This document shows positions 3,101-64,000 of a DNA stretch of 64,000 bases, one piece after another. The position numbers and the translations under genes are program-made. This stretch comes from Malacoraja senta (lineage: Eukaryota). The stretch covers positions 62,001-126,000 of the forward strand of contig JAXLNO010005073.1 in assembly GCA_038087875.1 (NCBI GenBank), read 5' to 3'. Under the pieces are notes generated by a model. It did no database searches. It was not told where the DNA came from and saw only the letters and a program-made list of their open reading frames with translations. Each line of letters opens with the position of its first letter. The first letter of the stretch is position 1.

Positions 3101-3770
3101 GGGTAGTAGGTATGTGTGATGAGCTGCCAGAGGAGGTAGTTGAAGCAAGTACTAACATTGCAATTAAAAGACACTTGAACAGGTTCATGGAAAGGAAAGG
3201 TTTAGAGGGATATGGGGCAAATGGAACTAAGTTTGATGAGGAAACTGGGTCAGCATGGACGTGTTGCAGCAGTTTCTGTGCTGTACGTCTCTGTGGTTCC
3301 ATGACTCTGACTAAGTCCTGATAGCTGTGTGAGAGCATCTTCACCAAAAGTATTGCAGAACTTCAAGAAGGCAGCTCACCACCATCTTCTCCAAGGTAGT
3401 TAGGGATGGATAATAAATATTGACTTTGATGCTGATATTCGAAGAAACTAATTGGAATAAATCTTCTCCTTTGCACCATACTGTAGATTATCTGCCACAA
3501 TTTATCCCAATCACTGACAAACACAGATACTTGAGCTTTTCTGTCTTTTAGTTACTATCCTTATAATAAATGCATCCTCAGCACACACAGATATGTTCTG
3601 TTCTCACGTATTTAAAACAAATTACACAATAGAATTTCAAGGAATTTCTTTTAAATGTAATGGGTAAATAGAGAAGTTGTATCTGAAGATAACATCAGCG
3701 TAAAAGAGGAAGGATCTGTGTTAGGCCCTGTTTACACTTCTGCTTGCACCAGATAAGACAGTGTGTGATA

Positions 3771-8600: not shown

Positions 8601-10692
8601 ATGTGGGATTCAGGCAACGGACACAGCAGCAGTGTGGAGCGGCTGGGAATTTTGGGATTCCCGTTAGGATTTCAGTCACAGAAGACAGTAGATGCCATTT
8701 TACTGGATGAATTTCAAAGAGAGTTAGATAGAGCTCTAGGGGCGAGCAGAATCAAGGGATATGGGGAGAAGGCAGGAACAGGCTACTGATTGTGGATGAT
8801 CAGCCATGATCACAATGAATGGCGGTGCTGGCTCGAAGGGCCAAATGGCCGACTCCTGCACCTATTGTCTATGTTTCTCTGTTTCTATGTCAGGTGAGAT
8901 ATGGGAACATGAGGTTAATCACTAGAGGGAGAGGAGAAACTTGGATAATTTTAAACTGAACAATTTCACTCTGTGGATTTTGACAAAAGTAAAGAAAAGG
9001 TTGAGATTGTTAGGAAGCTGGGCAGTGGGGATTTAAGAGAGATTGAGAAGAGGTTCTATTGACACTGCTCCCTTTACAAGTGTTGTGGAACCTCCAAAAT
9101 TATAAAGTATTTGTAAGTATTTGAATATCATTAATCCAGGTGTACTTGATTTTACTTGTGAAGCATTTCTTTACTCATTCAGTTATTCTCGACAATTTGA
9201 GCATCACTGTCAAGTTTAGTGGTTTCCCCCCATTGTTAATTGTACTCAAGACAGTGGTAGATTGCTTTCCTAAACCTTTCCATTCCTTCCGGTGAAAGTA
9301 CTCCCACAATTATACTAGGTAGGGAGTTGCAGCATTAAGAAGCAGTATCGATAAAGGAAAGGTGATTCATTTCTTGTTATCATGGGGCAAGCAATTCCTG
9401 ACACCACAAAACCTCTCCATCAGCGGCAAGGCCCAATTCAGGAGGGTGCAATGCCTTGATGAATGTTACTCCAGTGATACTGAAGAAGCACAACATCATC
9501 CAGGACATAGCATGTCCCCATCTACTACTGTAATCTTCTTTGTTTCCACCACTTGTGTACAGTGATCTCGGTCTCAATCAACCACCGCAAGGTGTCTCAA
9601 TGTTCATTGTCAAGGCTACTTCAATAACACCTCTCATATCAGTGATCCCATCAACCAAGAAAGACAATGGCAACAGGCCCATCGGATCACCACATGCTGT
9701 GGGTGCCTCTCCAGTCATGACTTGGAAATCCATTGCTGTTCCTTCATTATTATCAAGAGCACTGTGGGAGCATCATTCACTGGCTACGTAAGGATGTTCA
9801 CATCCTCATGGGCTAAAAATGGAAGCCTGAGCAGTGAGGCCCACATCCTAAACAAGTGTAAACATGGCCTAACACAGATCCTTCCTCTTTTAGGCTGATG
9901 TCATCTTCAGATATAACTTCTCCATTTACCCTTTACATTTAAAGGTAATTCCTTGTAATTCTATTTGTGTAATTTTTTAAAATACGTGAGAACAGAACAT
10001 ATCTGTGTATGCTGAGGATGCATTTATTATAAGGATAGTAACTAAAAGAGAGAGAAGCTCAAGTATCTGTGTTTGTCAGTGATTGGGATAAATTGTGGCA
10101 GATAATCTACAGTATGGTGCAAAGGAGAAGATTTATTCCAATTAGTTTTTTTACTAATATCAGCATCAAAGTCAATATTTATTATCCATCCCTAACTACC
10201 TTGGAGAAGATGGTGGTGAGCTGCCTTCTTGAAGTTCTGCAATACTTTTGGTGAAGATGCTCTCACACAGCTATCAGGACTTAGTCAGAGTCATGGAACT
10301 ACAGAGTCGTACAGCACAGAAACAGCTGCAACACGTCCATGCTGACCTAGTTTCCTCATCAAACTTAGTTCCATTTGCCCCATATCCCTCTAAACCTTTC
10401 CTTTCCATGAACCTGTTCAAGTGTCTTTTAATTGCAATGTTAGTACTTGCTTCAACTACCTCCTCTGGCAGCTCATCACATATACCTACTGTAGATCAGT
10501 GCATGTTCCTTTAACTTAGTGACCTCACCACTACTAACCACTCCCCATTGTCTCTCCTATAATTGTAAGGTTCCCACCTCCAGCCCTCTCTCTAGCTCCA
10601 GTGATGACCACGGACAGCTATTGCAAGGTGTGTGTTAGTGATTTAATAAACCATCAGTAAAAGACTCTGTGTAGGAACCAAGTCATTTTACA

Positions 10693-22000: not shown

Positions 22001-23410
22001 CGTGACGGTGAGTAGTCCGCAGCTCCGCAACTGGAGCCCTAGGTCGTTCCTGCTGGAGGCCGCTCCACGTTGCCCAGCCCCAACGACAACGGAGACCCGA
22101 CAAAGAAAAGGTCGGGTCTCCCGTGCAGCGGAAAGATTTTAAAGTTTCCTCCCCCCACCCCCACCCCCACCCCCCCACACACATACCCCGACAAAAAAAA
22201 TAATAAAAACTACATAAAAACGAGACAAAAATAATAAAAAGACAGACGGACTGCAGAGGCCGCTGCAACGAAAAGTCGCGCCGCCCACCAAGATGGATTC
22301 AACAGTGGCTGAATGGGAGATGTCAGAGAGTAATGGTGGATGGCTGTTTGTCAGGTTGGAGGCTGGTGACTAGTGGGGTGCCTCAGGGGTCTGTGTTGGG
22401 TCCACAGTTGTTTGTCATGTACATCAATGATCTGGATGATGGTGTGGAAAATTGGATTAGTAAGTATGCAGATGATACTAAGATAGGTGGTGTGGTGGAT
22501 AATGAAGTAGATTTTCAAAGTCTACAGAGAGATTTAGGCCATTTGGAAGAGTGGGCTGAAAGATGGCAGATGGAGTTTAATGCTGATAAATGTGAGGTAC
22601 TACATCTCGGCAGGACAAATCAAAATAGGACGTACATGGTAAATGGTAGAGAATTGAGGAATGCAGTTGAACAGAGGGATCTAGGAATAACTGTGCATAG
22701 TTCCCTGAAGGTGGAATCTCATGTAGATAGGGTGGTACAGAAAGCTTTTGGTGTGCTGGCCTTTATAAATCAGAGCATTGAATATAGAAGTTGGGATGTA
22801 ATGTTAAAATTGTACAAGGCATTGGTGAGGCCAATTCTGGAGTATGGAGTGCAATTTTGGTCGCCTAATTATAGGAAGGATGTCAACAAAATAGAGAGAG
22901 TACAGAGGAGATTTACTAGAATGTTGCCTGGGTTTCAGCAACTAAGTTACAGAGAAAGGTTGAACAAGTTAGGTCTTTATTCTTTGGAGCGCAGAAGGTT
23001 AAGAGGGGACTTAATAGAGGTCTTTAAAATTATGAGCGGGATAGACAGAGTTGACGTCGATAAGCTTTTTCCATTGAGAGTAGGGAAGATTCAAACAAGG
23101 GGACATGACGAGAATTAAGGGACAGAAGTTTAGGGGTAACATTAGGGGGAACATCTTTACTCAGAGAGTGGTGCTGTGTGGAATGAGCTTCCAGTGGAAG
23201 TGGTGGAGGCTGGTTCGATTTTATACTTTAAAAATAGATTGGATGGGTATATGGACGGGAAAGGAATGGAGGGTTATGGTCTGAGTGCAGGTAGATGGGA
23301 CTAGGGGGAAGTATATATATTTTTTTGAAACAAGAAAAAAAAAATCTGGCACGGACTTGAAGGGCCGAGATGGCCTGTTTCCGTGCTGTAATGGTTATAT
23401 GGTTATATGG
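19030..23410 (+). mobile_element. Long CR1 (ORF1 esterase remnant, EN, RT, 3' tail) interrupted by the GC-rich element
   Basis: CLPGARV...VVHIGTND (SGNH-like), FNARS, GDFN, PQGSVLGP, YADD, (GGTTATAT) tail. Confidence 0.92.
21431..22288 (-). mobile_element. GC-rich non-autonomous retroposon-like element, copy 2, inserted in a CR1
   Basis: 6-bp TSD CAAGAT at 21425-21430 and 22289-22294 splits CR1 RT at GVAR|WIQQW. Confidence 0.8.
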
Positions 23411-24690
23411 ACGCATTGGTGATCATTTTCCAATGTTCAATAGATTCAGGATCAGTTCCTGTGGATTGGAGGATAGCTAATGTTATCCCACTTTTCAAGA
23501 AAGGAGCGAAAGAGAAAACGGGGAATTACAGACCAGTTAGCCTGTCTTCGGTGGTGGGAAAGATGCTGGAGTCAATTATTAAAGAGGTAATAATGGGGCA
23601 TTTGGATAGCAGTAAAAGGATTAGTCCAATTCATCATGGATTTATGAAAGGGAAATCATGCTTGACTAATCTTCTGGAATTTTTTGAGGATGTGACAAGT
23701 AAAATGGATGAATGGGTGCCAGTGGATGTAGTGTATTTCAGAAAGCCTTTGATATGTTCCCGCACGGGAGACTGGTGACTAAAATTAGAGCACATGGTAT
23801 TGGGGGTAGGGTGTTGACATGGATATAACATTGGTTGGCAGACTGGAAGCAAAGAGTAGGAGTGAACGGGTCCTTTTCAGAATGGCAGGCAGTGGCGAGT
23901 GGAGTGCCGCAAGGCTCGGTGTTGGGGCCGCAACTGTTTACCATATATATTAATGATTTGGAAGAGGGAATTAGGTGCAACACTAGCAAGTTTGCGGATG
24001 ACACAAAGCTGGGTGGCAGTGTGAACTGTGAAGAGGATGTTAGGAGGGTGCAGGGTGACCTGGACAGATTGAGTGGGCAGATGCAGTATAATATAGATAA
24101 ATGTGAGGTTATCCACTTTGGCGGCAAAAACAAGGGGGCAGATTATTATCTCAATGGGGTTAGGCTAGGTAAGGGGGAGGTACAGCGAGACCTGGGTGTC
24201 CTTGTACACGGGTCACTGAAAGTTGGCTTACAGGTACAGCAGGTAGGAAAGAAAGCTAATGGAATGTTGGCCTTCATACAAGGGGATTCAGGAGTAAAGA
24301 CGTTCTTCTGCAGTTGTACAGGGCTCTGGTGAGACCACATCTGAAGTTTGTCTAAAGTTTTGGTCTCCTAATTTGAGGAAGGACATCCTTGTGATTGAGG
24401 CAGTGCAGCGTTGGTTCACGAGATTGATCCCTGGGATGGCGGGACTGTCATATGAGGATAGATTGAAAAGACTAGGCTTGTATTCACTGGAGTTTAGAAG
24501 GATGAGGGGGGATCTTAAAGAAACATAAAATCATAAAAGGACTGGACAAGCTGGATGCAGGAAAAATGTTCCCAATGTTGGGCGAGTCCAGAACCAGGGG
24601 CCACAGTCTTAGAATAAAGGGGAGGTCATGTAAGACTGTGTTGAGAAAAAACGTTTCAACCCAGAGAGTTGTGACCTTTTGGAATTCCTC
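23407..24690 (+). mobile_element. CR1 RT and 3' fragment
   Basis: ORFs 23407-23778, 23835-24332 and 24566 onward. Confidence 0.88.
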
Positions 24691-24914: not shown

Positions 24915-26435
24915 TTTAGAAACATAGAAAATATGTGCAGGAGTAGGTCATTCGGCCCTTCGAGCCTGCACCGCCATTCAATGTGGTCATGGCTGATCAT
25001 CCAACTCAGTATCCTGTACCTGCCTTCTCTCCTTACCCCCTGATCCCTTTAGCCACAAGGGCCACATCTAACTCCCTCTTAAATATAGCCAATGAACTGG
25101 CCTCAACTACCTTCTGTGGCAGAGAATTCCACAGATTCACCACTCTCTGTGTGAAAAATGTTTTTCTCATCTCGGTCCTAAAAGACTTTCCCCTTATCCT
25201 TAAACTGTGACCCCCTTGTCCTGGACTTCCCCAACATCGGGAACAATCTACCTGCATCTAGCCTCTCCAACCCCTTAAGAAGTTTCAGTAAGATCCCCCA
25301 TCAATCTTCTAAATTCTAGCGGGTACAAGCCGAGTCTATCCAGTCTTTCTTCATATGAAAGTCCTGACATCCCAGGAATCAGTCTGGTGAACCTTCTCTG
25401 TACTCCCTCATTGGCAAGAATGTCTTTCCTCAGATTTGGAGACCAAAACTGTACGCAATACTCCAGGTGTGGTCTCACCAAGACCCTGTACAACTGCAGT
25501 AGAACCTCCCTGTCCTATACTCAAATCCTCTTGCTATGAAGGCCAACATACCATTCGCTTTCTTCACTGCTTGCTGCACCTGCATGCCTACTTTCAATGA
25601 CTGGTGTACCATGACACCCAGGTCTCGTTGCATCTCCCCTTTTCCTAATTGGCCACCATCCAGATAATAGTCTACTTTCCTGTTTTTGCCACCAAAGTGC
25701 ATAACCTCACATTTATCCACATTATACTGCATCTACCATGCATTTGCCCACTCACCCAGCCTATCCAAGTCACCTTTCAGCCTCCTAGCATCCTCCTCAC
25801 AGCTAACACTGCCCCCCAGCTTCGTGTCATCCGCAAACTTGGAGATGTTGCATTCAATTCCCTCATCCAAATCAATAATATATATTGTAAATAGCTGGGG
25901 TCCCAGCAGTGAGCCTTGCGGTACCCCACTAGTCACTGCCTGCCATTCTGAAAAGGACCCGTTTACTCCTACACTTTGCTTCCTGTTTGCCAGCCAATTC
26001 TCCATCCACATCAATACTGAACCCCGAATACCATGTGCTTTAAGTTTGTATACTAATCTCTTATGAGGGACCTTGTCGAAAGCCTTCTGAAAGTCCAGAT
26101 ATAACACATCCACTGGTTCTCCCTTATCCACTCTACTAGTTACATCCTCGAAAAATTCTATAAGATTCGTCAGACATGATTTACCTTTCGTAAATCCACG
26201 CTGATATTGTCCAATAATTTCACCACTTTCCAAATGTGCTGCTATCCCATCTTTAATAACTGACTCTAGCAGTTTCCCCACTACTGATGTTAGACTAACT
26301 GGTCTGTAATTCCCCGTTTTCTCTCTCCCTCCCTTTTTAAAAAGTGGGGTTACATTAGCTACCCTCCAATCCTCAGGAACTACTCCAGAATCTAAAGAGT
26401 TTTGAAATATTATCACTAATGCATCCACTATTTCT
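24915..26435 (-). mobile_element. CR1 RT and 3' end
   Basis: ORFs 25733-26464, 25475-25732, 25275-25493 and 25033-25257; tail near 24915. Confidence 0.9.
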
Positions 26436-27139
26436 GCTTGCAGCTCTTGTTGTGTCTGCAGCAACTTAAATCAGTCTAAAGACTTCCTTAAAATCTATTG
26501 AAAGCTATAGAAATAATACAATTTAATATCGAGTAGATGTAATAATCAAAATGCTGTATTTACTCAGTTATTCCAATGTTGTGTGTAATTATCTCCTGAG
26601 TTTCACACAAGGTAAACCCACCAGTCACCATCCTCATGATCATTCAATTTCTTCTGCAACTTTCAGTTTTCTCCAAATCAAACCGCACAGTTTGCACCAA
26701 GACCTTCACAACCTCTGGGAATAAATCACGTCCCTTCCAGTTCAATTCAGTTTTGTTCAGTGTCACGATTCTGAGGTAAAGTGAAAAGCTTTTGCAGAAT
26801 GCTAACCAGCCTGGAGAAAGACGAGTATAATGAATGCTATTCACAACTGAAGTTAGAATACTTTCCAGTAACACATATTCAAGCAGATGACTGTGTGATG
26901 TTTGAAATGTCTATGATAATGGCAAATGACAGAATCTGTTGTTTTGTCATAAATGGAACGGTCAATATTCTTGCCTGTTCATGCTGTAGTTGGTCCGATA
27001 GTTCAAACCAATATTCAATTGCATCAGATCATGGTGGAGCTTGGACTTAGGAGATCACCAGTGAGCTGCGTATGATAATCAAGCTACTACAATTTTTCAA
27101 AGTAAGTCCAATATTGAGAGCAATTTTCTCCTCAGTTCT

Positions 27140-34864: not shown

Positions 34865-34939
34865 GTAAGTGCTTTCTCTTCGCCGGTCACAATCACCTTG
34901 CATTAATTATCATTGTCCGTGTAAACCCACATCCATTGT

Positions 34940-35720
34940 CAATCTCGCTTTACTCTCAACATCCCTGAATGTGTTGCTGCCTCATAAATCCACACCATCC
35001 TTCCTGGACCTCCATTCCACATCCCTGAATGTGTTGCTGCCTCATAAATCCACACCATCCTTCCTGGACCTCCATTCCACATCCCTGTATGTGTTGCTGC
35101 CTCACAAATCCACGCCATCCTTCCTGAACCTCCATTCCACATCCCCGTATGTGTTGCTGCCTCATAAATCCACACCATCCTTGCTGGACCTCCATTCCAC
35201 ATCCCTGTATGTGTTGCTGCGTCACAAATCCACACCATCCTTCCTGGACCTCCATTCCACATCCCTGAACGTGTTGCAGCCTCACAAGTCCACGCCATTC
35301 TTGCTGGACCTCCATTTCTGAGCCCATCCCATCAACTCCCTCTCCTTCTCCAGCACCGACACGGTCCTTATCAAAGTCAGAAATGGCCTCCTGTGAGCTT
35401 GTTGCAGAGTTAAACTCTCCCTCCTCATCCCGCTCAGCCTCTGCAGCCTTTGACACGGTTGTCCACACCATCCTTCCCAACATATCCTCACCACAGTCCA
35501 GGTGGGTGGAACTGCCCTCGACTTATCGATCCAGTCGCAGCCCGAGAACCACGCACAATGTCTTCACTTCACGCTCCCACAAAGTTCCTTCAAGACCAGG
35601 TGGAGTTCCTCCACTACCCCAACACTACCCCCTATCCCCACCTCCGTCTCCCTCCCTCCCACTCACTCATTTCTCTCATGTGATGAAATATCCCTGCATC
35701 AATCAGGCCAGGTTATTCCA
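34940..35720 (+). mobile_element. L2-type RT fragment in the intron after the leader exon
   Basis: SAAFDTVVHTIL (the LSAAFDTVDH motif) plus upstream RT sequence amplified as a minisatellite. Confidence 0.65.
34960..35317. repeat. 60-bp minisatellite, 6 copies
   Basis: Unit starts at 34960, 35020, 35080, 35140, 35200 and 35260. Confidence 0.95.
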
Positions 35721-42062: not shown

Positions 42063-42673
42063 GTAATAGAGTCATAGTGTCACACAGCACTGAAACAGGC
42101 CCTTTGGCCCAATTCATCCATACTGACCAACTACCCATCTAAACATCCCATTTGCCCTCATTTGGCCCATATCCATTCAACCTTTTTTCCATCTACCTGT
42201 TTAAATGCCCTTTAAATGCTGTACCTGCATCAAACACTTCCTCTGCTCGATCTTTCCATAAAGTATGTTTAGGTACCACACTCTTTGTCAAAACTGCCCC
42301 TAATATTAAGGGGTATATCAAATCTGCCCCTCTCACCTTAAACATGTACTATCTAGTTGTTGATTCCCCAACCCTGGACAAAAGACCATGTGCGTTTACT
42401 ATAGATATGCCTCTCATGATTTTATTCACTCCCATATAATCTCTGTTAAAGACATCCAAGAAATATAATGTCTGAAGAAGGGCCTCAACCTGAAAAGTCA
42501 CCTATCTATGTTCTCTAGAGTTCAAAGGTCTTTTATTGTCACGTGTACCAATTAAGGGGCAGTGATATTCATATTACCAGACCTGCTGAATTACTCCTGC
42601 ACTTTATGTCCTTTTACATATTAACCAGCATCTGCAGTTCTGTGTTTCTACTATACTAAAAACATCCCTACCT

Positions 42674-43050
42674 GGAAGTGTTGATGTGGGAGACGAGGGG
42701 GCGAGGGGGACAGGTGGTCACTACCAGGAAGTGTTGATGTGGGAGACGAGGGGGCGAGGGGGACAGGTGGTCACTACCAGGAAGTGTTGATGGGGTAGAC
42801 GAGGGGGTGAGGGGGACAGGTGGTCACTACCAGGAAGTGTTGATGTGGGAGACGAGGGGGCGAGGGGGACAGGTGGTCACGACCAGGAAGTGTTGATGTG
42901 GGAGACGAGGGGGCGAGGGGGACAGGTGGTCACTACCTGGAAGTGTTGATGTGGGAGACGAGGGGGCGAGGGGGACAGATGGTCACTACCTGGAAGTGTT
43001 GATGTGGGAGACGAGGGGGCGAGGGGGACAGATGGTCACTACCAGGAAGT
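42674..43050. repeat. 53-bp G-rich minisatellite, 7 copies plus a partial unit
   Basis: GGAAGTG unit starts at 42674, 42727, 42780, 42833, 42886, 42939 and 42992. Confidence 0.95.
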
Positions 43051-43179
43051 TTTGAAGACATCACTGAGCACGGTAGCTCAACATTCAGCCGACTGTCAGT
43101 CTGCAGGAAAAAGACAATTCTGCCCACAGTAGTTCAGAAAGCTGTTGGTGAACTGAACCACATGTGTCTGTTTCCACAG

Positions 43180-52039: not shown

Positions 52040-52960
52040 ACCACCGGGTGGCGCCGCAATGGCTGCCTCGCCAACAGTCTGTCTCGTCCTTTTCCTTCTT
52101 TGATGTTTTTTAGTATGTGTTAAATGGATGTTTTAGTGTTCTTTAGCTTTATTTTATGTGGGGGGTGGAGGGAGGTTGGGGGAACCTTTTTAAATCTCTT
52201 ACCTCGACGAAGATGCATTTTTTTCCGTATCGTATCTCCATCTGCACTGTGGCCTAACATCGAGGTGCTGGCGGCCTCTTGCTGGGGATTGACTTTGGGA
52301 GTTCCAACCGCGGGAGCCTGCAGGACTTAACATCATGGAGCTGATGGTCCCTGTCGGGGATCGACCTTGGAGCTCCAACCGTGGGAGCCTGCAGGATATA
52401 ACATCGTGGAGCACGTGGTCCCTTGGTTAGGGATCGACTACGGGAGCTCCAACCGTGGGAGCCTGCAGGATATAACATCGTGAAGCACGTGGTCCCTGTC
52501 GGGGATCGACTACGGGAGCTCCAACCGTGGGAGCCTGCGGATTTAGCATCGTGGAGCACGTGGTCCCTTGTTTAGGGATCGACTACGGGAGCTCCAACCG
52601 TGGAGCCTGCGGATTTAGCATCGTGAAGCACGTGGTCCCTTGGTTAGGGATCAACTTCGGGAGCTCCAAGCCGCACGAGCTTCGACCGCCCTGACCTGGG
52701 GGCTTCAATCGTCAGCTGTGGGAGCTTCCATCACCCCGACTGCGAATGGTTCGACTGCCCCAACCGCGGGAGAATAAAGAGTGAAGAAGATTAGAATTTA
52801 TCGCCTTCCATCACAGTGAGGAATGTGGAGAATCCACTGTGGTGGATGTTTATATTAACTTTTCTGTAGTTGTGTGTCTTGTTGCTTTTTCTAGTATGAC
52901 GATGATAAATTGAGTTTAATTGCACCTTAATTGGTGCACATGACAATAAAATACATTTGA
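52040..52960 (+). mobile_element. Related GC-rich element with an internal ~72-bp tandem array
   Basis: Same layout (GC-rich head, T-rich tract, G-run, CCATCACAGTG hairpin, 3' hairpin plus AATAAA); about 5.5 units at 52297-52680. Confidence 0.6.
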
Positions 52961-53217: not shown

Positions 53218-54923
53218 ATGGGTCAATTGCAGGCACATGGGACTGGCTTGGATGGGGCAACTTGGATGGTATAGACTAGTTGAGCCAAAGGACATGGTTC
53301 TGTGCTGTATGACTCTATGACTCTTTGACTTTATAAAAGGTGAAAACAATTTATATTGTGCCCTCTCTCTGAACAGGTTTGGGCAATCAAAGACAGACAG
53401 CTCCACCATCAAAAAGAAACACAGAAGGTGAATCTCACCTTTAAGGCAACCTTGAAGAAATTCAGCAGATGGCAGGTGTAGTGGCCATTTGGCCTGTTTT
53501 GCATGTCATTGATGATGGCATGTGCCTTTAAATTTTAGACTGCCCGTTGTATTGTGGATGGGATTTATGGCGTGTTTTGGTGCGTGTTTGGAACTTAGAT
53601 GCTTGCGCAGAAGTCTAGTTTTTAGATTAGTTTGGAGAGACGACGGAGAAGGTCAATCCTTCGACCATGTCAATGTTACGGAGACACGAGGAGTTTTGTA
53701 ATGTTTAAAGTTGCAAGTTGGAATTGAAGGAAGATTGCAGTAACGAGTCGGAAGAAACTTGGATGTATCTTGCTGTTTACCTTCAACAATAAAGCATTTA
53801 TTCAACAAAAGACTGTGTGTTGAAGCTTTATGAGTGAAGAAGCTCTGAAGGTCTCTGAGGAAGCTTGCATGCGTATCGAAGATATTCCCTTATCCATTCT
53901 CATCCAAATAGCGGCTAGAGAATTCGTTTCTCGAAAGATAAGAAAAATCTGCCGTTACAATAAGTCGAAGGGAACCTCCGGCAGGGGGGTTAAATACTAG
54001 TCCCAGAGAGTGGGACAGAAGATTAAATCGAAGGGAACCTCCGGCAGGGGGGTTAAATACTAGAAAGGGACATTGAGTGTGGTCTTTGACTGTGCTGCAG
54101 TCTTTAAAGGTACATCGCTTAACGGTGAACTACTGCAAGGTCCAGACCTTACCAACTCACTCATTGGAGTTCTCATCAAATTTAGGCAAGAACCGATTGC
54201 TTTAATGGCTGACATCAGATCGATGTTTCATCAAGTGAAAGTAGCTGGTGAACATATTGATTACCTGCGATTCTTATGGTGGCCTGAAGGGGATGTGCAG
54301 CAAGATCTTGTTGATTACCGGATGAAAGTACATCTCTTTGGAGCAGTGTCATCTCCAAGTTGTGCGAACTTCGCTTTAAGGAACACCACAGAGGATAATA
54401 AAGATTATTTCCCAGAGGAGGTAATTTCCACTTTGAAAAATAATTTCTACGTGGACGATTGCCTAAAATCCATATCTACTGAGCAGAAAGCAATTCAAAT
54501 GGTAAAACACCTGACCTCTCTCTGCAATAAGGGAGGATTTGTACTTTCCAAGTGGATCAGCAACAATCGTGTTGTATTGGAAAGCATTCCACCAGATGAC
54601 AGAGCTGAAGAAACCCAGGAGTTGGATTTAGTTAAAGACAATTTGCCAATGGAAAGGGCACTGGGACTGCACTGGTGCATGGAGACGGATGTGTTTAAGT
54701 TTAAATTGTCGATTCAGGAGCGACCATGTACAAGAAGGGATATCTTTTCTGTGATTGGCTCAGTATACAACCCTTTGGGATTTCTTGCACCATTTACACT
54801 GCCAGCCAAGTTAATTTTACAAAACCTTTGTAAGGAAAAACTTGGATGGGATGAGAGTATAACTCAAACATCCTCGCACCGTTGGCCAGAATGGTTAACG
54901 GACTCCATAAAATGTCAAAGTTT

Positions 54924-57900
54924 TCTTTTTTCTTACAATTAATGTACTCCCTTTATTTATTTTTTTACACTAGAAAAAGAAAAGATTGAAAGAAAGAAGA
55001 AAGTGAAGGAAAAAGTGTAAGTGTAGAAAAGTGTAGAAAATGTAACAACAAAAAAGGACGAAGACCCTATAAGAGCGAAATTAAAAACAAAAAGAAAAAG
55101 AGTTAAGAAATAGGCCCTAAGAAAAGAAAAGAGAAAGAGAAAAAAAGAGAAACAAATGTTTTTTTTAGCATCACGTAAATAGGACATACCAACTCTTCAA
55201 CTATCATCCCCCCTTACCTGACCTCAATTTTTTATTTTTTTAAAGTACTTTTGCACCCTATGTTTGTAATAATTCTATAAATGCAGACCACGTCAGGTGG
55301 AAGTGATCTGGTTTACCTGCTAGGAGGAGTCTTATCTCTTCTAGGTGTAATGTTTCAAACATATTTGAAATCCACATATTTATAGTTGGTATTGGAGCCT
55401 TCTTCCAAATTTTTAGAATTAGCTTTTTTCCAGTTATTAACCCATAGTCCATTAATTTCTTTTGAAACACATTTAGTTCTGGATCATCTTCCGTTATTCC
55501 GAAGATAATCCATTCTGCTTTGGGTATCAGTCTTGTTTTAAATAACTTTGTAAAGATTTCAAAAATTTCATTCCAAAATTTTTGAATTTTTGTAGAGAAG
55601 ACAAATGAGTGCGCTATAGTTGCTTCTTGGGATTGACATTTATCACAAATAGATGATACGTTTGGGAAAATTTTATGAATTTTAGTTTTCGAATAATATA
55701 ATCTATGTAAAATTTTAAATTGTATTAAAGTGTGTCTTACATTAATCGAGCATTTATGCACGTTTAATAAGTATTCATTCCAACTTTCCTTTGACATTTT
55801 AATAGCTAACTCTTGTTCCCAGTCTCTTCTGATACCCTCCGTAGGTGGTATTTGTACATTTAAAATAATATTATACAAATATGATATTAAGTTTGCTGAT
55901 TCCGCTTTTATCTGCATTGCCTCGTCCAATACATCTACTGGATTATTATAATGATCTTTTGTATATTTTTTCAAATAGTCGCATATTTGAAAATATTTAA
56001 AATATTGATTATTTCCGAGTTTATATTTTATTTGTAATTGTTGAAATGAAAGTAATTTTCCAGTTTCATACAAGTCACCAAGCGTTTTAATTCCTAGTCT
56101 ATCCTATTGTGTATAAGCTTTATCTATAATAGAAGGACTAAACGAAGGGTTATTGACTATAGGTAATAAAAGTGATAAGTTTCTTAATTTTAAATTTTGT
56201 TTTATTTGTTTCCAAATACGGATTGTACTATGAATAATTGGGTTCTTATTATAGTTTATGTTATTCAGTTTCATTGGAGAGAGGAGGATCGCTCCAATGT
56301 TTCTAGAGGAGCAATCCTCTTTCTCCATTACAATCCAGTCTACTTGCTGGGCGGAGTTATCCATCAGTTGAATCATGTTTTTAATATTTACTGACCAATA
56401 ATAATACATAAAATTAGGTAGTGCTAGACCCCCCAATACTTTAGGTTTATTCACATGGGTTTTTTGTATTCTATGTGATTTATAGTCCCATATAAAATTA
56501 GTGATATCTGAGTCGAGTTTTTTAAAAAACTTCTTAGGTAAGTATATAGGAATTGATTGAAATAGGTATAAAATTTGTGGTAAAAAGATCATTTTTATTG
56601 CGTTTATTCGGCCTATTAAAGACATCGGGAGCGTTTTCCAGAATTTAATTAATGTATTTAGTTTATTAAGTAGGGGGTCAAAATTTGCCCTGAACATACC
56701 TTGATATGTTCTGGTAATTTCGATTCCCAAATATTTAAATTTTTCTGTAGCTATTTTAAAAGGGAATTTTAAAAGATGTGTTGAATCTTTCGGTTTTATT
56801 GACATAATTTCACTTTTATTCCAATTTATTCTATATCCAGAAAAAGATCCGAAGTCTTCAATTAAATTTAATATATTTGGTATAGTGATTTGAGGTTTTG
56901 TAATATACAATAATATATCATCCGCGTATAAAGATATTTTATTATATGAGTCTTTAGTATTATATCCATGAATATCAGGGTGTATTCTAATTTTTTCTGC
57001 TAGCGGTTCAATAATGAGAGCAAACAGCTGTGGTGATAATGAGCATCCTTGTCTATTTCCCCTTGATAGTTGAAATTTCGAGGATAATATGTTATTAGTA
57101 AGTATTCTAGCTGTAGGTTTGTTATATAGTAACTTAATCCATAAAATAAAATTCTCTCCCAGTTGAAATTTTTGTAATACTTTATCCATATAATTCCATT
57201 CTACTTGATCAAATGCTTTTTCAGCATCCAGCGAAATAATTGATAATTCTTGATCTTCAGATTTGTGTGAGTGCATTATGTTGAGTAGACGTCTCATATT
57301 ATTAGAAGAGTATCTCTTAGGGATAAACCCCGTCTGATCTGGGTTTATTAATTTACTAATGTATTTACTTAATCTTCTAGCTAATGTTTTCGCTAATATT
57401 TTTTGATCTGTGTTTAACAATGCTATCGCTCTATATGAGCCAGGTTCTTCTAAACCTTTATTTTTCTTAGGTATTAATGTAATCGTTGATTCCGCTAATG
57501 TATCAGGTAGTATTCGTTTTTTAAAAGCGTATTGGTACATTTTTTGTAATCTTGGTATTATTTTATCATAAAAGCTTTTATAAAATTCATTAGTAAATCC
57601 ATCAGGGCCTGGTGTTTTTCCATTTTTAATGAGTTTATTGTATCTTCTAATTCCTTAATTGAGATTTGTGCACCCAGTTCCTCTTGTTCCTTCAGCTCTA
57701 ACTTTGGAAGATTACAGGTATCCAAGAACTTTGTGATATTATTGGAATCAATTATCGTTTTAGATGTATACAAATTCTCGTAAAATTGCGCAAATCTTTT
57801 ATTAATATCCTTCGGTGTTGTTAATAATTCCCCTTTATCTGATTTGATCTTTGGTATAGTATGTTCCTTTTCTCGTTTTTTTACCTGGCGAGCCAAAAGT

Positions 57901-58323
57901 TTATGCGGTTTATCCCCAAATTCAAAGTGCTCTTGTTTTGTAATTTGAAAAAGTCTTATAAGTTTGGCAGATAATAATTTATTTAATTTAAATTTTAAAA
58001 TTATTATTTTATTATGTTTATCTATTGATGGATCTTTAGCATTATCTATATTCATTTGTCTAATAAGTTCTTCTAACTGTCTTTGTTCATTCTTATTATT
58101 TTTATTTTGAAAAGCTTGATATGAAATTATAATACCCCTAATGTATGCTTTAAAAGATTCCCAAAGTAAAGTAGGCGATATATCTGAAGTATCATTTGTT
58201 TGAAAAAAGACCTCCATTTGTTCTTTTAAATATATACTCGCTTGTGGATCTTTTAAAATTTGAGAGTTAAATCTCCAGAATGATTTATTCTTAGACAATC
58301 CTTCCAGTTTTAAAAAGAAAGTT
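54924..58323 (-). mobile_element. 5'-truncated L1-clade LINE (ORF2 in three frameshifted pieces)
   Basis: ORFs 57558-58298, 56104-57540 (LDAEKAFD, RQGCSLSP, YADD) and 55258-56073 (C-terminal Cys-rich region); short A tail. Confidence 0.92.
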
Positions 58324-60082
58324 AGTGGATCAGCAACAATCGTGTTGTATTGGAAAACATTCCACCAGATGACAGAGCTGAAGAAACCAAGGAGTTGGAT
58401 TTAGTTTAAAACAATTTGCCAATGGAAAGGGCACTGGGACTGCACTGGTGCATGGAGACGGATGTGTTTAAGTTTAAATTGTCGATTCAGGAGCGACCAT
58501 GTACAAGAAGGGATATCTTTTCTGTGATTGGCTCAGTATACAACCCTTTGGGATTTCTTGCACCATTTACACTGCCAGCCAAGTTAATTTTACAAAACCT
58601 TTGTAAGGAAAAACTTGGATAGGATGAGAGTATAACTCAAACATCCACGCACCGTTGGCCAGAATGGTTAACGGACTCCATAAAATTTCAAAGTTTAAGG
58701 TGGATCGGTGCATAAAGCCTAAAAACTTTGGTAAGATCAGTAGTGCACAATTGCATCATTTTTCGGATGTCAGTGAAAGTGGTTACAGGACTGTTTCATA
58801 TTAAAGACTGCAAAATGTTAGCAAAAGAGTGCATGTTGCATTCTTAATGAGAAAAGCCAGAGTGGCACCACTGAAACAAATGACGATTCCCAGAATGGAA
58901 CTTACAGCAGCAGTCTTAGCTGTTAAAATTGACATAATGCTGCAAAAGGAACTACAATTTCAACTGGAAGAATCTATATTCTGGACCGATAGCACTACGG
59001 TTCTGAAATACATCAATAATGAAAACAAACGCTTTATGACATTTGTAGCAAATAGAGTCTCCTTTGTATTGGGAGCTACTAATGTTTCTCAATGGAGATA
59101 TGTTAGCACCAAAGAAAATCCTGCGGATGAAGCCTCTAGAGGACTAACAGCAAATTGTTTTCTAAACAACAGGAGATGGATCAATGTGCCCAAGTTTCTT
59201 TGTGAACAAAGCAGAGAATGGCCAAAGCTTGAAGTCGGATATGAAATCTCTGTAAATGAACCGGAAATTAAACAAAACATTTCGGTGATTCTGATTGCTA
59301 AAGACTCATATGACACCGTGAACAATTTAATTACCCACTTTTCATCATGGAATAAATTGATAACTTCTTAAGATAAATTGATAATTGTTCTTAAAATAAA
59401 AACAAGAATATTGCTGGCGGCTCGGGAAAGGAGACAAATTACAGAGTATCCTGAGAGAGAATCCTGATAAACGGAAAGGAGAGATTGAAGGCCAGATGCA
59501 AGTTTTTGAAGCTTCATATGACGTACAGGATTTACGTCTTGATGATGTCCTCAAGGCGGAAAATGCGATCATCTCTTTCTGTCAAAGACAGAAATACAAA
59601 GAAGAAATATAAACATTGGAAGCTGGAGGACAGGGGGTAAAAAGAAACAGTCAATTGTACAAGCTCGACCCAGTCTGGGAGGAAGGTCTTCTGCGGATGG
59701 GTGGTCGCCTAAACAAATTGGCAATGCCCGTAAAAACTAAACATCCTATCATTCTCTCACTTTTACATAACGACATTATTTTTACGACATATTCATGAAC
59801 AAGTTAGACATGGAGGAAGAAATTATATGTTGTCCCAACTTGGTAACAAATATTGGGTTATCAAGGCTGATTCTGCAGCATCACGAGGTTCTTGGTTGAT
59901 GGGAAGAATACTAGAAATCATGCCTCACGTTCGGGGTTTGGTGCGTATGGTACGTCTTAAAACAAAAAACTATGTTTTAATAAGACCAATAACCAAGTTG
60001 TGTTTGCTTCTAGAAGGCGAAGGTGAAGATGGAAGAGTCGATGAAGGGCCATGATTGCGGATATATAGTGCATGCAATTTTT

Positions 60083-60157
60083 TCCTCGTTAGTATCGTGT
60101 TTAGTATCCCTGCCTGTCACGCGTTAGACCGGGGTTCAATTTGCCGACGAGGAGCCA
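60083..60157 (+). pseudogene. tRNA-Asp(GTC)-like sequence with 3' CCA inside the BEL 3' untranslated region
   Basis: 72 nt colinear with vertebrate tRNA-Asp (about 10 differences from the human sequence as recalled), GTC anticodon, followed by CCA; anticodon stem broken. Confidence 0.85.
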
Positions 60158-60526
60158 CAGGGTTTAATTCCCTGACCTTTTGCTTTTGATATATGTATAG
60201 CCTTTATGGCCATTTTTTAAATGTTTATTAGTAATTGCCTCATTAGATACTCGGAACAATTAGGAGCCGGTATGTAGTGGCCATTTGGCCTGTTTTGCAT
60301 GTCACTGATGATGGCATGTGCCTTTAAATTTTAGACTGCCCGTTGTATTGTGGGTGGGATTTATGACGTGTTTTTAGGCGTGTTTGGAGCTTAGATGCTT
60401 GTGCAGAAGTCTAGTTTTTAGATTAGTTTGGAGAGACGATGGAGAAGGTCAATCCTTCGACCATGTCAATGTTACGGAGACACGAGGAGTGTTGTAATGT
60501 TTAAAGTTGCAAGTTGGAATTGAAGG

Positions 60527-63500
60527 GACTCAAATAGAGAATGCTATTAGACAGTGTGTGAGGCAGGAGGCAGAGAAGGAAAGCACTCAGACCCAACATG
60601 TAGGGGGGAAAGAAGAAAACAATCATAAACAGAGAATAAGAGGTGGTGGGGTTCTTAAACGGGTGAGCAGAGAAACAGAGGGGTGTAAAATGCGGGCGGA
60701 AGCAATACGAAGCAAGGTGAAAAGTAAAAGTGGCAGGCAGACAAATCCACGGCAAAAATCAAAAAGAGTCACTTTTCAACATAATTGGATAAGGGGTAAG
60801 AGCGTTGTAAAAACAAGCCTGAAGGCTTTGTGTCTCAATGCAAGGAGCATTCGTAATAAGGTGGATGAGTTGAACATGCAGATAGCAATTAATGCTTATG
60901 ATATAGTTGGGATCACGGAGACATGGCTCCAGGGTGACCAAGGCTGGGAGCTGAACATCCAGGGATATTCAATATTTAGGAGGGATAGAGAGAAAGGAAA
61001 AGGAGGTGGGGTAGCGTTGCTGGTTAGAGAGGAGATTAACGCAGTGGAAAGGAAGGACATTAGCTTGGAGGATGTGGAATCGGTATGGGTAGAGCTGCGA
61101 AACACTAAGGGGCAGAAAACGCTGGTGGGTGTTGTGTACAGGCCACCTAGCAGTAGTAGTTAAGTTGGGGATGGCATCAAAGAGGAAATTAGAAATGCGT
61201 GCAACAAAGGCAAAACAGTTATAATGGGTGACTTCAATCTACATATAGATTGGGTGAATCAAATTGGCAGGGGTGCTGAGGAAGAGGATTTCTTGGAATG
61301 TATGAGGGATAGTTATCTAAACCAACATGTAGAGGAACCAACGAGAGAGCAGGCTATTCTAGACTGGTTATTGAGTAATGAGGAAGGGTTAGTTAGCAGA
61401 CTTGTTGTGCGTGCCCCCTTGAGCAAGAGTGACCATAATATGTTTGAGTTCTTCATTAGGATGGAGAGTGACATTGTTAATTCAGAAACAACGGTTCTGA
61501 ACTTAAAGAAAGGTAACTTTGAGGGTATGAGACGTGAATTGGCCAAGATTGACTGGCAATTCGTTCTAAAAGGGTTGACGGTGGACATGCAATGGAAGGC
61601 ATTTAAAGACTGCATGGATGAACTACAAAAATTGTTCATCCCAGTTTGGCAAAAGAATAAATCAGGGAAGGTAGTGCATCTGTGGATAACAAGGGAAATC
61701 AGGGATAGTACCAAAGCAAAAGATGATGCGTACAAATTAGCCAGAAAAAGCAGCATACCAGAGGACTGGGAGAAATTCAGAGACAAGCAGAGGAGGACAA
61801 AGGGCTTAATTAGGAAAGGGGAAATAGATTATGAAAGGAAACTGGCAGGGAACATAAAAACTGACTGCAAAAGTTTTTATAGATATGTGAAGAGAAAGAG
61901 ATTAGTTAAAACAAATGTAGGTCCCTTGCAGTCATAAACAGGTGAATTGATCATGGGGAACAAGGATATGGCGGACCAATTGAATAACTACTTTGGTTCC
62001 GTCTTCACTAAGGAAGACATAAATAATCTGCCGGAAATAGCAGGGGGCCGCGGGTCAAAGGAGATGGAAGAACTGAGTGAAATCCAGGTTAGTCGGGAAG
62101 TGGTGTTGGGTAAATTGAATGGATTAAAGGCCGATAAATCACCAGGGCCAGATAGGCTGCATCCCAGAGTACTTAAGGAAGTAGCTCCAGAAATAGTGGA
62201 TGCATTAGTGATAATTTTTCAAAACTCTTTGGATTCTGGAGTAGTTCCTGAGGATTGGAGGGTAGCAAACGTAACCCCACTTTTTAAGAAGGGAGGGAGA
62301 GAGAAAACGGGGAATTACAGACCAGTTAGTCTAACATCGGTAGTGGGGAAACTGCTAGAGTCAGTTATTAAAGATGGGATAGCAGCACATTTGGAAAGTG
62401 GTGAAATCATTGGACAAAGTCAGCATGGATTTACGAAAGGTAAATCGTGTCTGACGAAACTTATAGAATTTTTCGAGGATGTAACTAGTAGAGTGGATAG
62501 GGGAGAACCAGTGGATGTGTTGTATCTGGACTTTCAGAAGGCTTTCGACAAGGTACCACATACGAGATTAGGATACAAACTTAAATCACACGGTATTGGG
62601 TTTTCAGTATTGATGTGGATAGAGAACTGGCTGGCAAACAGGAAGCAAAGAGTAGGAGTAAACGGGTCCTTTTCACAATGGCAGGCAGTGACTAGTGGGG
62701 TGCCGCAAGGCTCAGTGCTGGGACCCCAGCTATTTACAATTTATATTAATGATCTGGACGAGGGAATTGAAAGCAACATCTCCAAGTTTGCGGATGACAC
62801 GAAGCTGGGGGGCAGTGTTAGCTGTGAGGAGGATGCTAGGAGACTGCAAGGTGACTTGGATAGGCTGGGTGAGTGGGCAAATGTTTGGCAGATGCAGTAT
62901 AATGTGGATAAATGTGAGGTTATCCACTTTGGTGGCAAAAACGGGAAGGCAGACTATTATCTAAATGGTGGCCGATTAGGAAATGGGGAGATGCAGCGAG
63001 ACCTGGGTGTCATGGTACACCAGTCATTGAAAGTAGGCATGCAGGTGCAGCAGGCAGTGAAGAAAGCGAATGGTATGTTGGCCTTCATAGCAAGAGGATT
63101 TGAGTATAGGAGCAGGGAGGTTCTACTGCAGTTGTACAGGGTCATGGTGAGACCACACCTGGAGTATTGCGTACAGTTTTGGTCTCCAAATCTGAGGAAG
63201 GACATTATAGCCATAGAGGGAGTGCAGAGAAGGTTCACCAGACTGATTCCTGGGATGTCAGGACTTTCATATGAAGAAAGACTGGATAGACTTGGCTTAT
63301 ACTCGCTAGAATTTAGGAGATTGAGAGGGGATCTTATAGAAACGTACAACATTCTTATGGGGTTGGACAGGCTAGATGCAGGAAGATAGTTCCCGATGTT
63401 GGGGAAGTCCAGGACAAGGGGTCACAGCTTAAGGATAAGGGGGAAAACCTTTAAGACCGAGATGAGGAAAAACGTTTTCACACAGAGAGTGGTGAATCTC

Positions 63501-63726
63501 TGGAACTCTCTGCCACAGAGGGTAGTTGAGGCCTGTTCATTGGCTATATTTAAGAGGGAGTTAGATGTGGCCCTTGTGGCTAAAGGGATCAGGGGGTATG
63601 GAGAGAAGGCAGGTATGGGATACTGAGTTGGATGATCAGCCATGATCATATTGAATGGCGGTGCAGGCTCGAAGAGCCGAATGGCCTACTCCTGCACCTA
63701 TTTTCTTTGTATCTATGTATCTATGT
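60527..63726 (+). mobile_element. CR1-clade LINE (EN, RT and 3' tail) inserted in the BEL 3' LTR
   Basis: EN NARS/TETW/YRPP/GDFN/SDHN; RT 61947-63389 with PQGS and FADD; in-frame stops; (TATGTATC) tail; splits the LTR with loss of about 3 bp and no TSD. Confidence 0.95.
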
Positions 63727-63952
63727 ATTGCAGTAACGAGTCGGGAAGAAACTTGGATGTATCTTGCTGTTTACCATCAACAATAAAGCATTTATTCAAC
63801 AAAAGACTGTGTTGAAGCTTTATGAGTGAAGAAGCTCTGAAGGTCACTGAGGAAGCTTGCATGCGTATCGAAGATATTCCCCTCATCCATTCTCATCCAA
63901 ATAGCGGCTAGAGAACTCGTTTCTCAAAAGATAAGAAAAATCTGCCGCTACA

Positions 63953-64000
63953 CCGATGTTGGGTGAGTCCAGAACCAGGGGCCACTGTTTAAGAATAAGG
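63953..64000 (+). mobile_element. CR1 3' fragment
   Basis: ccgatgttgggtgagtccagaaccagggg matches the MLGESRTRG segment of the other CR1 copies. Confidence 0.7.

What the first reader, a model, noticed from the sequence alone, without database searches (positions are those of the whole stretch)
60083..60157. A tRNA-Asp-like sequence with terminal CCA sits inside the BEL/Pao 3' untranslated region
It lies between the end of pol (60054) and the PPT/3' LTR (60273). It spans a full 72-nt tRNA length with a GTC anticodon and ends in CCA, which eukaryotic tRNA genes do not encode, so it looks captured from a mature tRNA by reverse transcription. The acceptor stem is fully Watson-Crick (TCCTCGT/ACGAGGA) while the anticodon stem is broken. 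If shared across the family it could act as a Pol III promoter or insulator, a packaging or primer decoy, or an RNA structural module (inference). I recall tRNA-like inserts being reported in some non-autonomous LTR groups, but not in a pol-encoding elasmobranch BEL; this needs a literature check.
Basis: partly seen in the sequence, partly recalled or inferred. Interest (0 to 1): 0.7.

Follow-up and report, generated by a model that had tools for sequence, protein, structure and literature searches.

The report
Captured tRNA-Asp copy in skate BEL/Pao
A decayed copy of a mature aspartate tRNA, with its added CCA tail, sits between the polymerase gene and the 3' LTR of a skate BEL/Pao retrotransposon; many copies in several organisms share it, so it is most likely a host RNA picked up once and carried along since.

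Summary
Window 60083-60154 is a 72-nt tRNA-Asp(GTC)-derived sequence followed by CCA (60155-60157). It matches a published human tRNA-Asp-GTC at 65 of 75 positions with no indel. It scores 22.5 bits on Rfam tRNA (gathering 29), and ARAGORN calls it only at 90% thresholds. It starts 28 nt after the pol stop codon (DUF5641 end, 60054) and ends 115 nt before the 3' LTR (60273).

It is not private to this copy. Logan contigs from four differently labelled organisms cover the module joined to the pol end and to the LTR. Two of this copy's ten differences from the human tRNA are not the family majority. Six other first-reader notes report the same module elsewhere in this genome, so the scan found it before on other DNA.

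It is lineage-specific. Eighty BEL/Pao loci from metagenomes show nothing comparable, and no paper found describes it.

Best reading: a mature tRNA-Asp was copied into an ancestral element, probably by reverse-transcriptase template switching. It has travelled since as a tolerated, decaying passenger.

The parts
53477..53959 (+). 5' LTR of the BEL/Pao copy (TGTAG...CTACA)
   Evidence: Direct repeats with 60273-60526 and 63744-63952; ends read; about 96% identical to the 3' LTR outside the LINE insertion.
53960..54072 (+). Leader after the 5' LTR. It has no TGG-type primer-binding site and contains a 36-nt unit twice (53965-54000, 54028-54063).
   Evidence: Sequence. Pairing with the tRNA-like module is no better than shuffles. 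No complement of the module's 3' end occurs elsewhere in the window.
54073..54942 (+). pol fragment: RVT_1 plus the start of Peptidase_A17 (Pao)
   Evidence: Pfam.
58416..59371 (+). pol resumes after a nested minus-strand LINE: Peptidase_A17 region in several broken frames
   Evidence: Pfam; ORFs.
59827..60054 (+). Last pol ORF, DUF5641 (the C-terminal domain of BEL/Pao pol); stop codon TGA at 60052-60054
   Evidence: Pfam PF18701, 8.4e-10; ORF list.
60083..60154 (+). tRNA-Asp(GTC)-derived body, 72 nt, sense to the element
   Evidence: Rfam tRNA 22.5 bits; ARAGORN -ps90 calls tRNA-Asp gtc; 65/75 identity to the human tRNA-Asp-GTC printed in PMC12217144; 18/21 cloverleaf pairs; covered by many contigs in four organisms.
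60155..60157 (+). CCA, the post-transcriptionally added 3' end of a mature tRNA
   Evidence: Sequence; included in the ARAGORN call.
60158..60176 (+). T-arm-like hairpin directly after CCA (5-bp stem, 7-nt loop, then AC); possibly a second, partial T-arm copy
   Evidence: It is the best 19-nt gapless match between the module and the 115 nt downstream: 14/19 to module index 48-66, with 29/1000 shuffles as good. The hairpin folds at -7.5 kcal/mol.
60178..60187 (+). Two T4 runs (60178-60181, 60184-60187) that would read as Pol III terminators
   Evidence: Sequence. Their function is not tested.
60253..60272 (+). Weakly purine-rich stretch abutting the 3' LTR (PPT-like, 13/20 purines)
   Evidence: Sequence. 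The label rests on position only.
60273..60526 (+). 3' LTR, first part
   Evidence: 96% identical to 53477-53730.
63729..63952 (+). 3' LTR, second part, after a LINE insertion (60527-63728)
   Evidence: Direct repeats at 95-99% with 53750-53959; junctions read; the LINE's EN and RT ORFs.

Best explanation
The 75 nt are a retro-copied mature host tRNA-Asp(GTC), complete from nucleotide 1 to the added CCA. The copy became part of the 3' untranslated spacer (pol stop to PPT) of an ancestral element of an abundant skate BEL/Pao lineage and has been copied with the element ever since. The most likely route (inferred) is reverse-transcriptase template switching inside the virus-like particle during minus-strand synthesis. 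The enzyme would jump from the element's RNA onto the CCA end of a co-packaged tRNA, copy it to its 5' end, and return to element RNA. That route gives a sense-oriented insert with no poly(A) and no target duplication of its own. Today the module is not a working tRNA. It most likely persists because the pol-PPT spacer tolerates extra sequence, as a passenger that decays at about the pace of the rest of the element. Shown: tRNA-Asp origin, exact ends with CCA, position, presence in many copies and several organisms, and absence from other BEL/Pao lineages sampled. Inferred: the capture mechanism and the lack of function.
For: Identity and ends. Family-wide: contigs of four organisms (A, B, C, E) span the pol end plus module (59994-60153; 60019-60160), the pol end through the module into the LTR (60023-60329), and the module into the LTR (60083-60278). 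Nearly all depth has C at 60143 where this copy has G, and in organisms B, C and E most has A at 60096 where this copy has C (in organism A the window's C is the majority by depth). Both alternative letters are those of the human tRNA, so this copy is a slightly more decayed member. Six other first-reader notes report the same module in other BEL copies of this genome (unchecked leads). No sign of constraint: two adjacent anticodon-stem pairs are broken. G19 and C61 are changed, and 6 of the 10 differences lie in paired positions. The MFE fold is not a cloverleaf (-22 against -12.4 kcal/mol for the cloverleaf; z -1.5). Module-bearing contigs differ from the window by about 7.5-14%, much as pol and LTR contigs do (8-16%, table 8). 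Single contigs lack the whole module plus hairpin (60080 to 60180), its 5' half (60046 to 60124) or its 3' part (60141 to 60216), so it can be lost. Mechanism: sense orientation and no poly(A); the best flanking repeat is 10 nt with one mismatch, and 31/300 shuffles do as well. Template-switch capture of host RNAs by LTR elements, including a mosquito BEL, is documented (PMC5131818).
Against: Stem covariation and a proper rate comparison of module against flanks were therefore not done. The module has persisted in a high-copy lineage across several organisms even though deletions do arise, which a mild benefit would also explain. The acceptor stem (7/7) and D stem (4/4) are intact. So is the T stem, if the family-majority C at 60143 is counted. 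That is the half of a tRNA recognised by RNase P and CCA-related enzymes. The host's own tRNA-Asp sequence and gene flanks were not available, and the reference used is human. Depth over the module is 3-5 times lower than over the immediately flanking bins, so many family members may carry a different or no module.
Confidence: 0.6

Rival explanations
1. The captured tRNA copy has become a working cis-element of the family. It could be an internal Pol III promoter or TFIIIC-binding site (A and B boxes) giving a short transcript ending at the T-runs. It could instead be a tRNA-like top half that recruits tRNA-handling proteins (RNase P, export, packaging).
For: The module is retained in many copies in four organisms. 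The acceptor and D stems are fully paired, and the T stem is paired in the family-majority version. T4 runs lie 21 and 27 nt after the discriminator, behind a small hairpin. Pol III-type small-RNA modules are accepted as promoters in Cassandra, Helenus and Ajax (PMC10886601).
Against: B-box C61 is T and A-box G19 is T in this copy. The anticodon stem is broken and the cloverleaf is 9.6 kcal/mol above the MFE. There is no evidence that the module diverges more slowly than the rest of the element, and deletion variants exist. A Pol III unit ending before the PPT could not be reverse-transcribed as an element, so its benefit is unclear. RNase P cutting would sever the genomic RNA from its 3' LTR.
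Confidence: 0.2
2. The tRNA copy entered a master copy at the DNA level, as a LINE-mediated retro-insertion of a tRNA or of a short tRNA-headed SINE (about 60084-60218), and then spread with the element.
For: A 10-nt repeat with one mismatch flanks 60084-60208 (positions 60074-60083 and 60209-60218). Several contigs lose similarity near 60040-60046 and regain it near 60213-60227. LINEs are abundant and active in this window.
Against: The repeat is T-rich and 31/300 shuffles do as well. There is no A-tail or LINE-like tail. Tailless tRNA retropseudogenes as described are 3'-truncated, carry 8-35-nt target duplications and belong to the therian L1 system (PMC5322556). This module is full length with CCA. 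A T-rich duplication sits on the wrong side for an L1-type insertion of a sense tRNA (established knowledge of L1 target-primed reverse transcription).
Confidence: 0.1
3. A genomic tRNA-Asp gene with its flanks was captured (by read-through or DNA recombination), and the CCA is a chance feature of the gene's 3' trailer, which ends at the T-run terminator.
For: T-runs follow the module at a distance compatible with a long trailer. The hairpin and T-runs would then be the gene's native flank.
Against: A CCA exactly after the discriminator has a chance of 1 in 64. The trailer would be unusually long. The sequence after CCA looks like a second partial T arm rather than unrelated flank.
Confidence: 0.05
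4. It is a private insertion in this one decayed copy.
For: None found.
Against: Dozens of distinct contigs in each of four organisms carry the module joined to the same flanks. Six other notes report it in the same genome.
Confidence: 0.01

Closest known systems
LTR-mediated retroposition by template switching (Tan et al. 2016, PMC5131818; retroviral transduction of host RNA)
   Same: A host RNA lies inside an LTR element between its two LTRs, in sense orientation, without poly(A) or its own target duplication. A BEL element is among the published mediators. Such chimeras can retrotranspose again.
   Different: The published cases are mRNA pieces that replace internal ORFs and give single or few non-autonomous copies. 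Here the captured RNA is a complete mature tRNA with CCA. It sits in the non-coding pol-PPT spacer next to the pol C-terminus, and it is carried by a high-copy family in several organisms. Junction microsimilarity could not be tested.
Helenus, Ajax and Cassandra (TRIMp3) non-autonomous LTR retrotransposons (Kojima 2024, PMC10886601)
   Same: LTR retrotransposons that carry a small-RNA-derived (tRNA or 5S) sequence as a family feature. As in Helenus, the tRNA-like part shows no complementarity to the PBS.
   Different: In TRIMp3 the module lies inside the LTRs of very short, non-coding elements, lacks CCA, and is read as the Pol III promoter that makes the template RNA. Here it lies outside the LTR, upstream of the PPT, in a pol-bearing BEL/Pao. 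A Pol III transcript from it would not contain the element.
Tailless tRNA retropseudogenes and tRNA-headed SINEs (Schmitz 2004; Noll 2015, PMC5322556)
   Same: Genomic copies of tRNAs made by reverse transcription.
   Different: Those are LINE-dependent, free-standing, 3'-truncated or extended by a LINE-like tail, and flanked by 8-35-nt duplications. This one is full length with CCA, has no significant duplication, and spreads only as part of an LTR element.
Genuine vertebrate tRNA-Asp(GTC) gene
   Same: 65/75 identity to the human sequence, the same length, a GTC anticodon, and acceptor, D and most T-stem pairs.
   Different: CCA is encoded, the score is below Rfam's gathering threshold, the anticodon stem is broken, and G19 and C61 are changed.

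Membership tests
Functional tRNA gene (Rfam RF00005) | Score at or above the curated gathering threshold (29 bits) | tested here: not met
   22.5 bits. There is no hit at gathering on the whole window, and ARAGORN at default thresholds finds none.
Functional tRNA gene (Rfam RF00005) | Intact cloverleaf and conserved tertiary nucleotides (G18 G19, C61) | tested here: not met
   18/21 pairs; pairs 27-43 and 28-42 are broken; G19 and C61 are T.
Functional tRNA gene (Rfam RF00005) | Eukaryotic genes do not encode CCA | tested here: not met
   CCA is present at 60155-60157.
Retro-copied mature tRNA (processed tRNA pseudogene) | Homology to a cytoplasmic tRNA over its full length, starting at nucleotide 1 | tested here: met
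   [quoted passage not shown] The host tRNA was not available.
Retro-copied mature tRNA (processed tRNA pseudogene) | CCA directly after the discriminator base | tested here: met
BEL/Pao LTR retrotransposon (Belpaoviridae) | Pao-type pol domains (RVT_1, Peptidase_A17, DUF5641) between two LTRs | tested here: met
   This copy lacks gag, protease and the integrase core, carries two LINE insertions, and has no matching target duplication.
Helenus / TRIMp3 | tRNA-like sequence located inside the LTRs | tested here: not met
   The module ends 115 nt before the LTR start and is absent from the 5' LTR.
Helenus / TRIMp3 | Short (<1 kb) element with no coding capacity | tested here: not met
   pol fragments lie within the same LTR pair, and contigs join the module to the pol C-terminus.
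tRNA-derived SINE / tailless retropseudogene | Flanking target duplication of 8 nt or more | tested here: inconclusive
   The best candidate is 10 nt with one mismatch, is T-rich, and 31/300 shuffles do as well.
tRNA-derived SINE / tailless retropseudogene | A-rich or LINE-derived tail (SINE), or 3' truncation of the tRNA (tailless) | tested here: not met
   The tRNA is full length with CCA and no A-tail follows it.
LTR-mediated retroposition chimera | Host RNA in sense orientation inside an LTR element, without poly(A) or its own TSD | tested here: met
LTR-mediated retroposition chimera | Microsimilarity at both switch points | not testable with these tools
   This needs the pre-capture element sequence and the host tRNA; no sister subfamily sequence could be fetched.

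The most novel reading that the evidence does not exclude
The family has domesticated the captured tRNA. The intact acceptor/T-arm half, the encoded CCA (which blocks RNase Z, by established knowledge), the following hairpin and the T-runs would form a working tRNA-like cassette. It could be a TFIIIC/Pol III site acting as promoter or chromatin boundary for the integrated element. It could instead be a handle that recruits tRNA-binding host proteins to the genomic RNA. If so, it helps explain the success of a BEL/Pao lineage that an earlier follow-up agent in this scan reported (s1-179754) to lack a normal tRNA-type primer-binding site.
Probability: 0.15. Interest if true: 0.7.

Novelty: new variant of a known kind. 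Interest (0 to 1): 0.45.

Why it matters
It is a clean natural record of a retrotransposon's reverse transcriptase copying a complete mature tRNA, CCA included, into its own genome and then multiplying it many times over.

The practical consequence is for annotation. Skate and ray genomes will carry many tRNA-Asp look-alikes that are parts of BEL/Pao elements, not genes or SINEs, so tRNA pseudogene counts and small-RNA mapping need to allow for this.

The biological consequence is a vertebrate, pol-encoding counterpart to the small-RNA-bearing TRIMs (Cassandra, Helenus, Ajax). It gives a family in which one can test whether such modules are passengers or become Pol III/TFIIIC sites scattered through the genome.

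Tried and rejected
  - The 75-aa pol C-terminal ORF had no word-search relatives, and the 180-aa ORF's best relatives were 74% identical or less.
  - Exact-pattern scans for the module plus CCA found nothing in viral contigs or metagenome contigs.
  - Protein-guided scans of viral contigs gave nothing close.
  - As a result I have no alignment, no covariation test and no rate test.
- **A general BEL/Pao feature?** Rejected.
  - I took 80 metagenome BEL/Pao loci. 56 include the pol C-terminus and 42 of those have at least 300 nt downstream.
  - Default ARAGORN found no tRNA in any of them.
  - ARAGORN at 90% thresholds found only noise-level hits, 3 against 4 in shuffles, and none in the right place.
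  - There was no significant BLAST match to the module, and cmscan at E up to 5 found no tRNA in the eight nearest loci.
- **Self-primer or PBS partner?** Rejected for this copy.
  - Leader-module duplex energy is not better than shuffles (79/500 for the full leader, 36/500 for its first 36 nt).
  - The longest exact complement is 7 nt, and 148/500 shuffles match or exceed it.
  - No complement of the module's 3' end occurs elsewhere in the window.
- **Private insertion.** Rejected.
- **Target duplication around the module.** Not significant.
- **The search of earlier findings by sequence.** Blank.
- **Restraints kept.** I described the family-majority letters at two places but did not assemble them into a sequence.

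Full report
**Observation**

Window 60083-60157 reads as a 72-nt tRNA body plus CCA.
- Rfam's tRNA model aligns to 60083-60154 from its first to its last position, at 22.5 bits and E 0.023 on the 401 nt searched. That is below the curated gathering score of 29.
- The whole-window scan at gathering thresholds and default ARAGORN report nothing.
- With ARAGORN's thresholds lowered to 90%, exactly 60083-60157 is called tRNA-Asp (gtc), and it is the only call in the 64-kb window.
- At the same setting, 514 kb of other BEL/Pao loci give 3 calls and their shuffles give 4.

[quoted passage not shown] The window matches it at 65 of 75 positions with no insertion or deletion. This is my hand comparison. 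The differences are at index 14, 18, 20, 29, 42, 43, 56, 60, 61 and 68.

The cloverleaf keeps 18 of 21 pairs:
- acceptor stem 7/7, all Watson-Crick;
- D stem 4/4;
- anticodon stem 3/5, with 27-43 and 28-42 broken;
- T stem 4/5.

The minimum-energy fold is not the cloverleaf (-22.0 against -12.4 kcal/mol) and is not unusual against shuffles (z -1.5). The thing is a decayed tRNA-Asp copy, not a working tRNA.

**Context**

An LTR pair is present.
- The 5' LTR is 53477-53959. The 3' LTR is 60273-60526 and resumes near 63729-63952, after a 3.2-kb LINE with endonuclease and RT ORFs.
- Between the LTRs lie RVT_1 and Peptidase_A17 (Pao) fragments and a minus-strand LINE flanked by a duplicated stretch of pol (at least 300 nt). 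The final ORF matches DUF5641, the C-terminal domain of BEL/Pao pol, and stops at 60054.
- The module starts 28 nt after that stop and ends 115 nt before the LTR.
- This copy is dead. It lacks gag, protease and the integrase core, has two LINE insertions, and has no matching target duplication at its ends.

**Is it shared?**

Yes. I laid Logan contigs of four runs from four differently labelled organisms (coded A, B, C, E) on 59650-60550 at 80% likeness.
- All four cover every bin across the module.
- Listed contigs join the pol end to the module (59994-60153, depth 807; 60019-60160, depth 816). One runs from the pol end through the module and UTR into the LTR (60023-60329). Others join the module to the LTR (60083-60278; 60071-60240; 60053-60185).
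- At 60143 nearly all depth in all four organisms has C where this copy has G.
- At 60096 most contigs in organisms B, C and E have A where this copy has C.
- Both alternative letters are those of the human tRNA, and C at 60143 restores the broken T-stem pair. This copy is therefore a slightly more decayed member of a family that carries the module.
- The other eight differences are not among the best-supported variant rows. The table is truncated, so I do not claim they are fixed in the family.

Nine organism labels held part of the stretch in the run search. Six other first-reader notes report the same tRNA-Asp+CCA module in other BEL copies of this genome (s1-177979, s1-200037, s1-175046, s1-140997, s1-141264, s1-141684). 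These are unchecked leads, but they agree. The scan has therefore found this before on other DNA of the same genome.

**Heterogeneity**

- Depth over the module and the next 60 nt is 3-5 times lower than over the immediately flanking bins.
- Single contigs lack the whole module plus hairpin (60080 to 60180), its 5' half (60046 to 60124, with 30 homologous letters between) or its 3' part (60141 to 60216).
- About a dozen contigs lose similarity near 60040-60046 and regain it near 60213-60227, with unknown content between.
- So the module can be lost or replaced, and subfamilies probably differ.
- Module-bearing contigs differ from the window by about 7.5-14%. That range is similar to pol and LTR contigs (8-16%, table 8). 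It gives no sign that the module changes more slowly than the rest.

**Is it a general BEL/Pao feature?**

No.
- 80 BEL/Pao loci from metagenomes (at most 61% amino-acid identity) include the pol C-terminus in 56 cases, 42 of them with at least 300 nt downstream.
- ARAGORN finds no tRNA in them at default thresholds. At the relaxed threshold that recovers the window's module it gives only noise.
- BLAST with the module gives nothing significant.
- cmscan at E up to 5 on the eight nearest loci gives no tRNA.
- Exact-pattern scans for the module's 3' half plus CCA found nothing in viral or metagenome contigs.

**What follows the CCA**

- Directly after CCA comes a 5-bp/7-nt-loop hairpin. It is the best 19-nt match between the module and the 115 nt downstream (14/19 to the module's own T arm plus AC; 29 of 1000 shuffles do as well).
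- It may be a second, partial T-arm copy, which would fit successive template jumps. The support is modest.
- Two T4 runs follow (60178-60181 and 60184-60187). They would terminate Pol III, but T-runs are common in this AT-rich spacer.

**Origin**

- Encoded CCA exactly after the discriminator (1 in 64 by chance) and a body starting at tRNA nucleotide 1 point to a mature tRNA as the template.
- The insert is sense to the element. It has no A-tail and no significant flanking duplication. The best flanking repeat is a T-rich 10-mer with one mismatch, and 31/300 shuffles do as well.
- This is what capture by template switching during minus-strand synthesis predicts. That mechanism is documented for host mRNAs in LTR elements of flies, mosquito (a BEL), zebrafish and chicken (PMC5131818).
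- LINE-mediated tRNA retrocopies as described are 3'-truncated, carry 8-35-nt duplications and belong to the therian L1 system (PMC5322556). This one fits them poorly.
- The capture mechanism remains an inference.

**Function**

- Nothing found supports the module being a primer or PBS partner.
  - The leader after the 5' LTR has no TGG-type site (an earlier follow-up, s1-179754, said the same of this family).
  - Its pairing with the module is at chance.
  - No complement of the module's 3' end exists elsewhere in the window.
- A Pol III/TFIIIC role is possible in principle, but two conserved promoter-box positions (G19, C61) are changed in this copy.
- A transcript ending at the T-runs could not be a template for the element.
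- A tRNA-like fold that attracted RNase P would cut the genomic RNA.
- I therefore rate a tolerated passenger as most likely and a cis function as a real but minority possibility. No RNA data could be examined.

**Comparison with the known**

- The nearest published systems are the TRIMp3 elements (Cassandra, Helenus, Ajax; PMC10886601). Their tRNA- or 5S-derived sequence lies inside the LTRs of tiny non-coding elements and is read as their Pol III promoter. Here the position, the CCA and the pol-bearing host element all differ.
- Searches for BEL/Pao with tRNA-Asp, and for skate transposon surveys, returned no description of this module.
- It is a new variant of a known kind: host-RNA capture by an LTR element, and small-RNA-bearing LTR elements.

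No other copy could be aligned, and no RNA run could be laid.
- The tRNA reference is human, not the host's.

Noticed in passing
window 60527-63728: A plus-strand LINE with endonuclease (Exo_endo_phos) and RT ORFs is inserted in the 3' LTR of the BEL copy. It ends in a short TATCTATG-type repeat just before the LTR resumes. Related LINE pieces recur through the window (for example 23408-24687, and inverted at 25282-26436).
   Followed up: partly
window 54551-58623: A minus-strand LINE (RT ORF 56104-57540) sits inside pol, between two 98%-identical copies of at least 300 nt of pol sequence (54551-54850 and 58324-58623). Another note (s1-140909) already reports this as an L1 insertion with a 373-bp target duplication.
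   Followed up: no
window 53471-53476 and 63953-63958: The BEL copy has no matching target-site duplication (GGCAGG before the 5' LTR, CCGATG after the 3' LTR), and it lacks gag, protease and the integrase core. It may be a product of recombination between two copies.
   Followed up: no
window 53965-54063: The leader after the 5' LTR holds the same 36-nt unit twice (53965-54000 and 54028-54063) and has no TGG-type primer-binding site.
   Followed up: partly
window 3245-3318 (+) and 10277-10351 (-): At ARAGORN 85% thresholds, which is noise level, two tRNA-Glu(ttc)-like calls fall at mirrored places inside the 343-nt inverted repeat 3105-3447 / 10148-10490. They could be tRNA-derived SINE heads.
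   Followed up: no
window 52285-52669: An array of about 72-nt tandem units lies just upstream of the BEL copy. Other arrays lie at 42612-43108 (53-nt period) and 34896-35375 (60-nt period).
   Followed up: no
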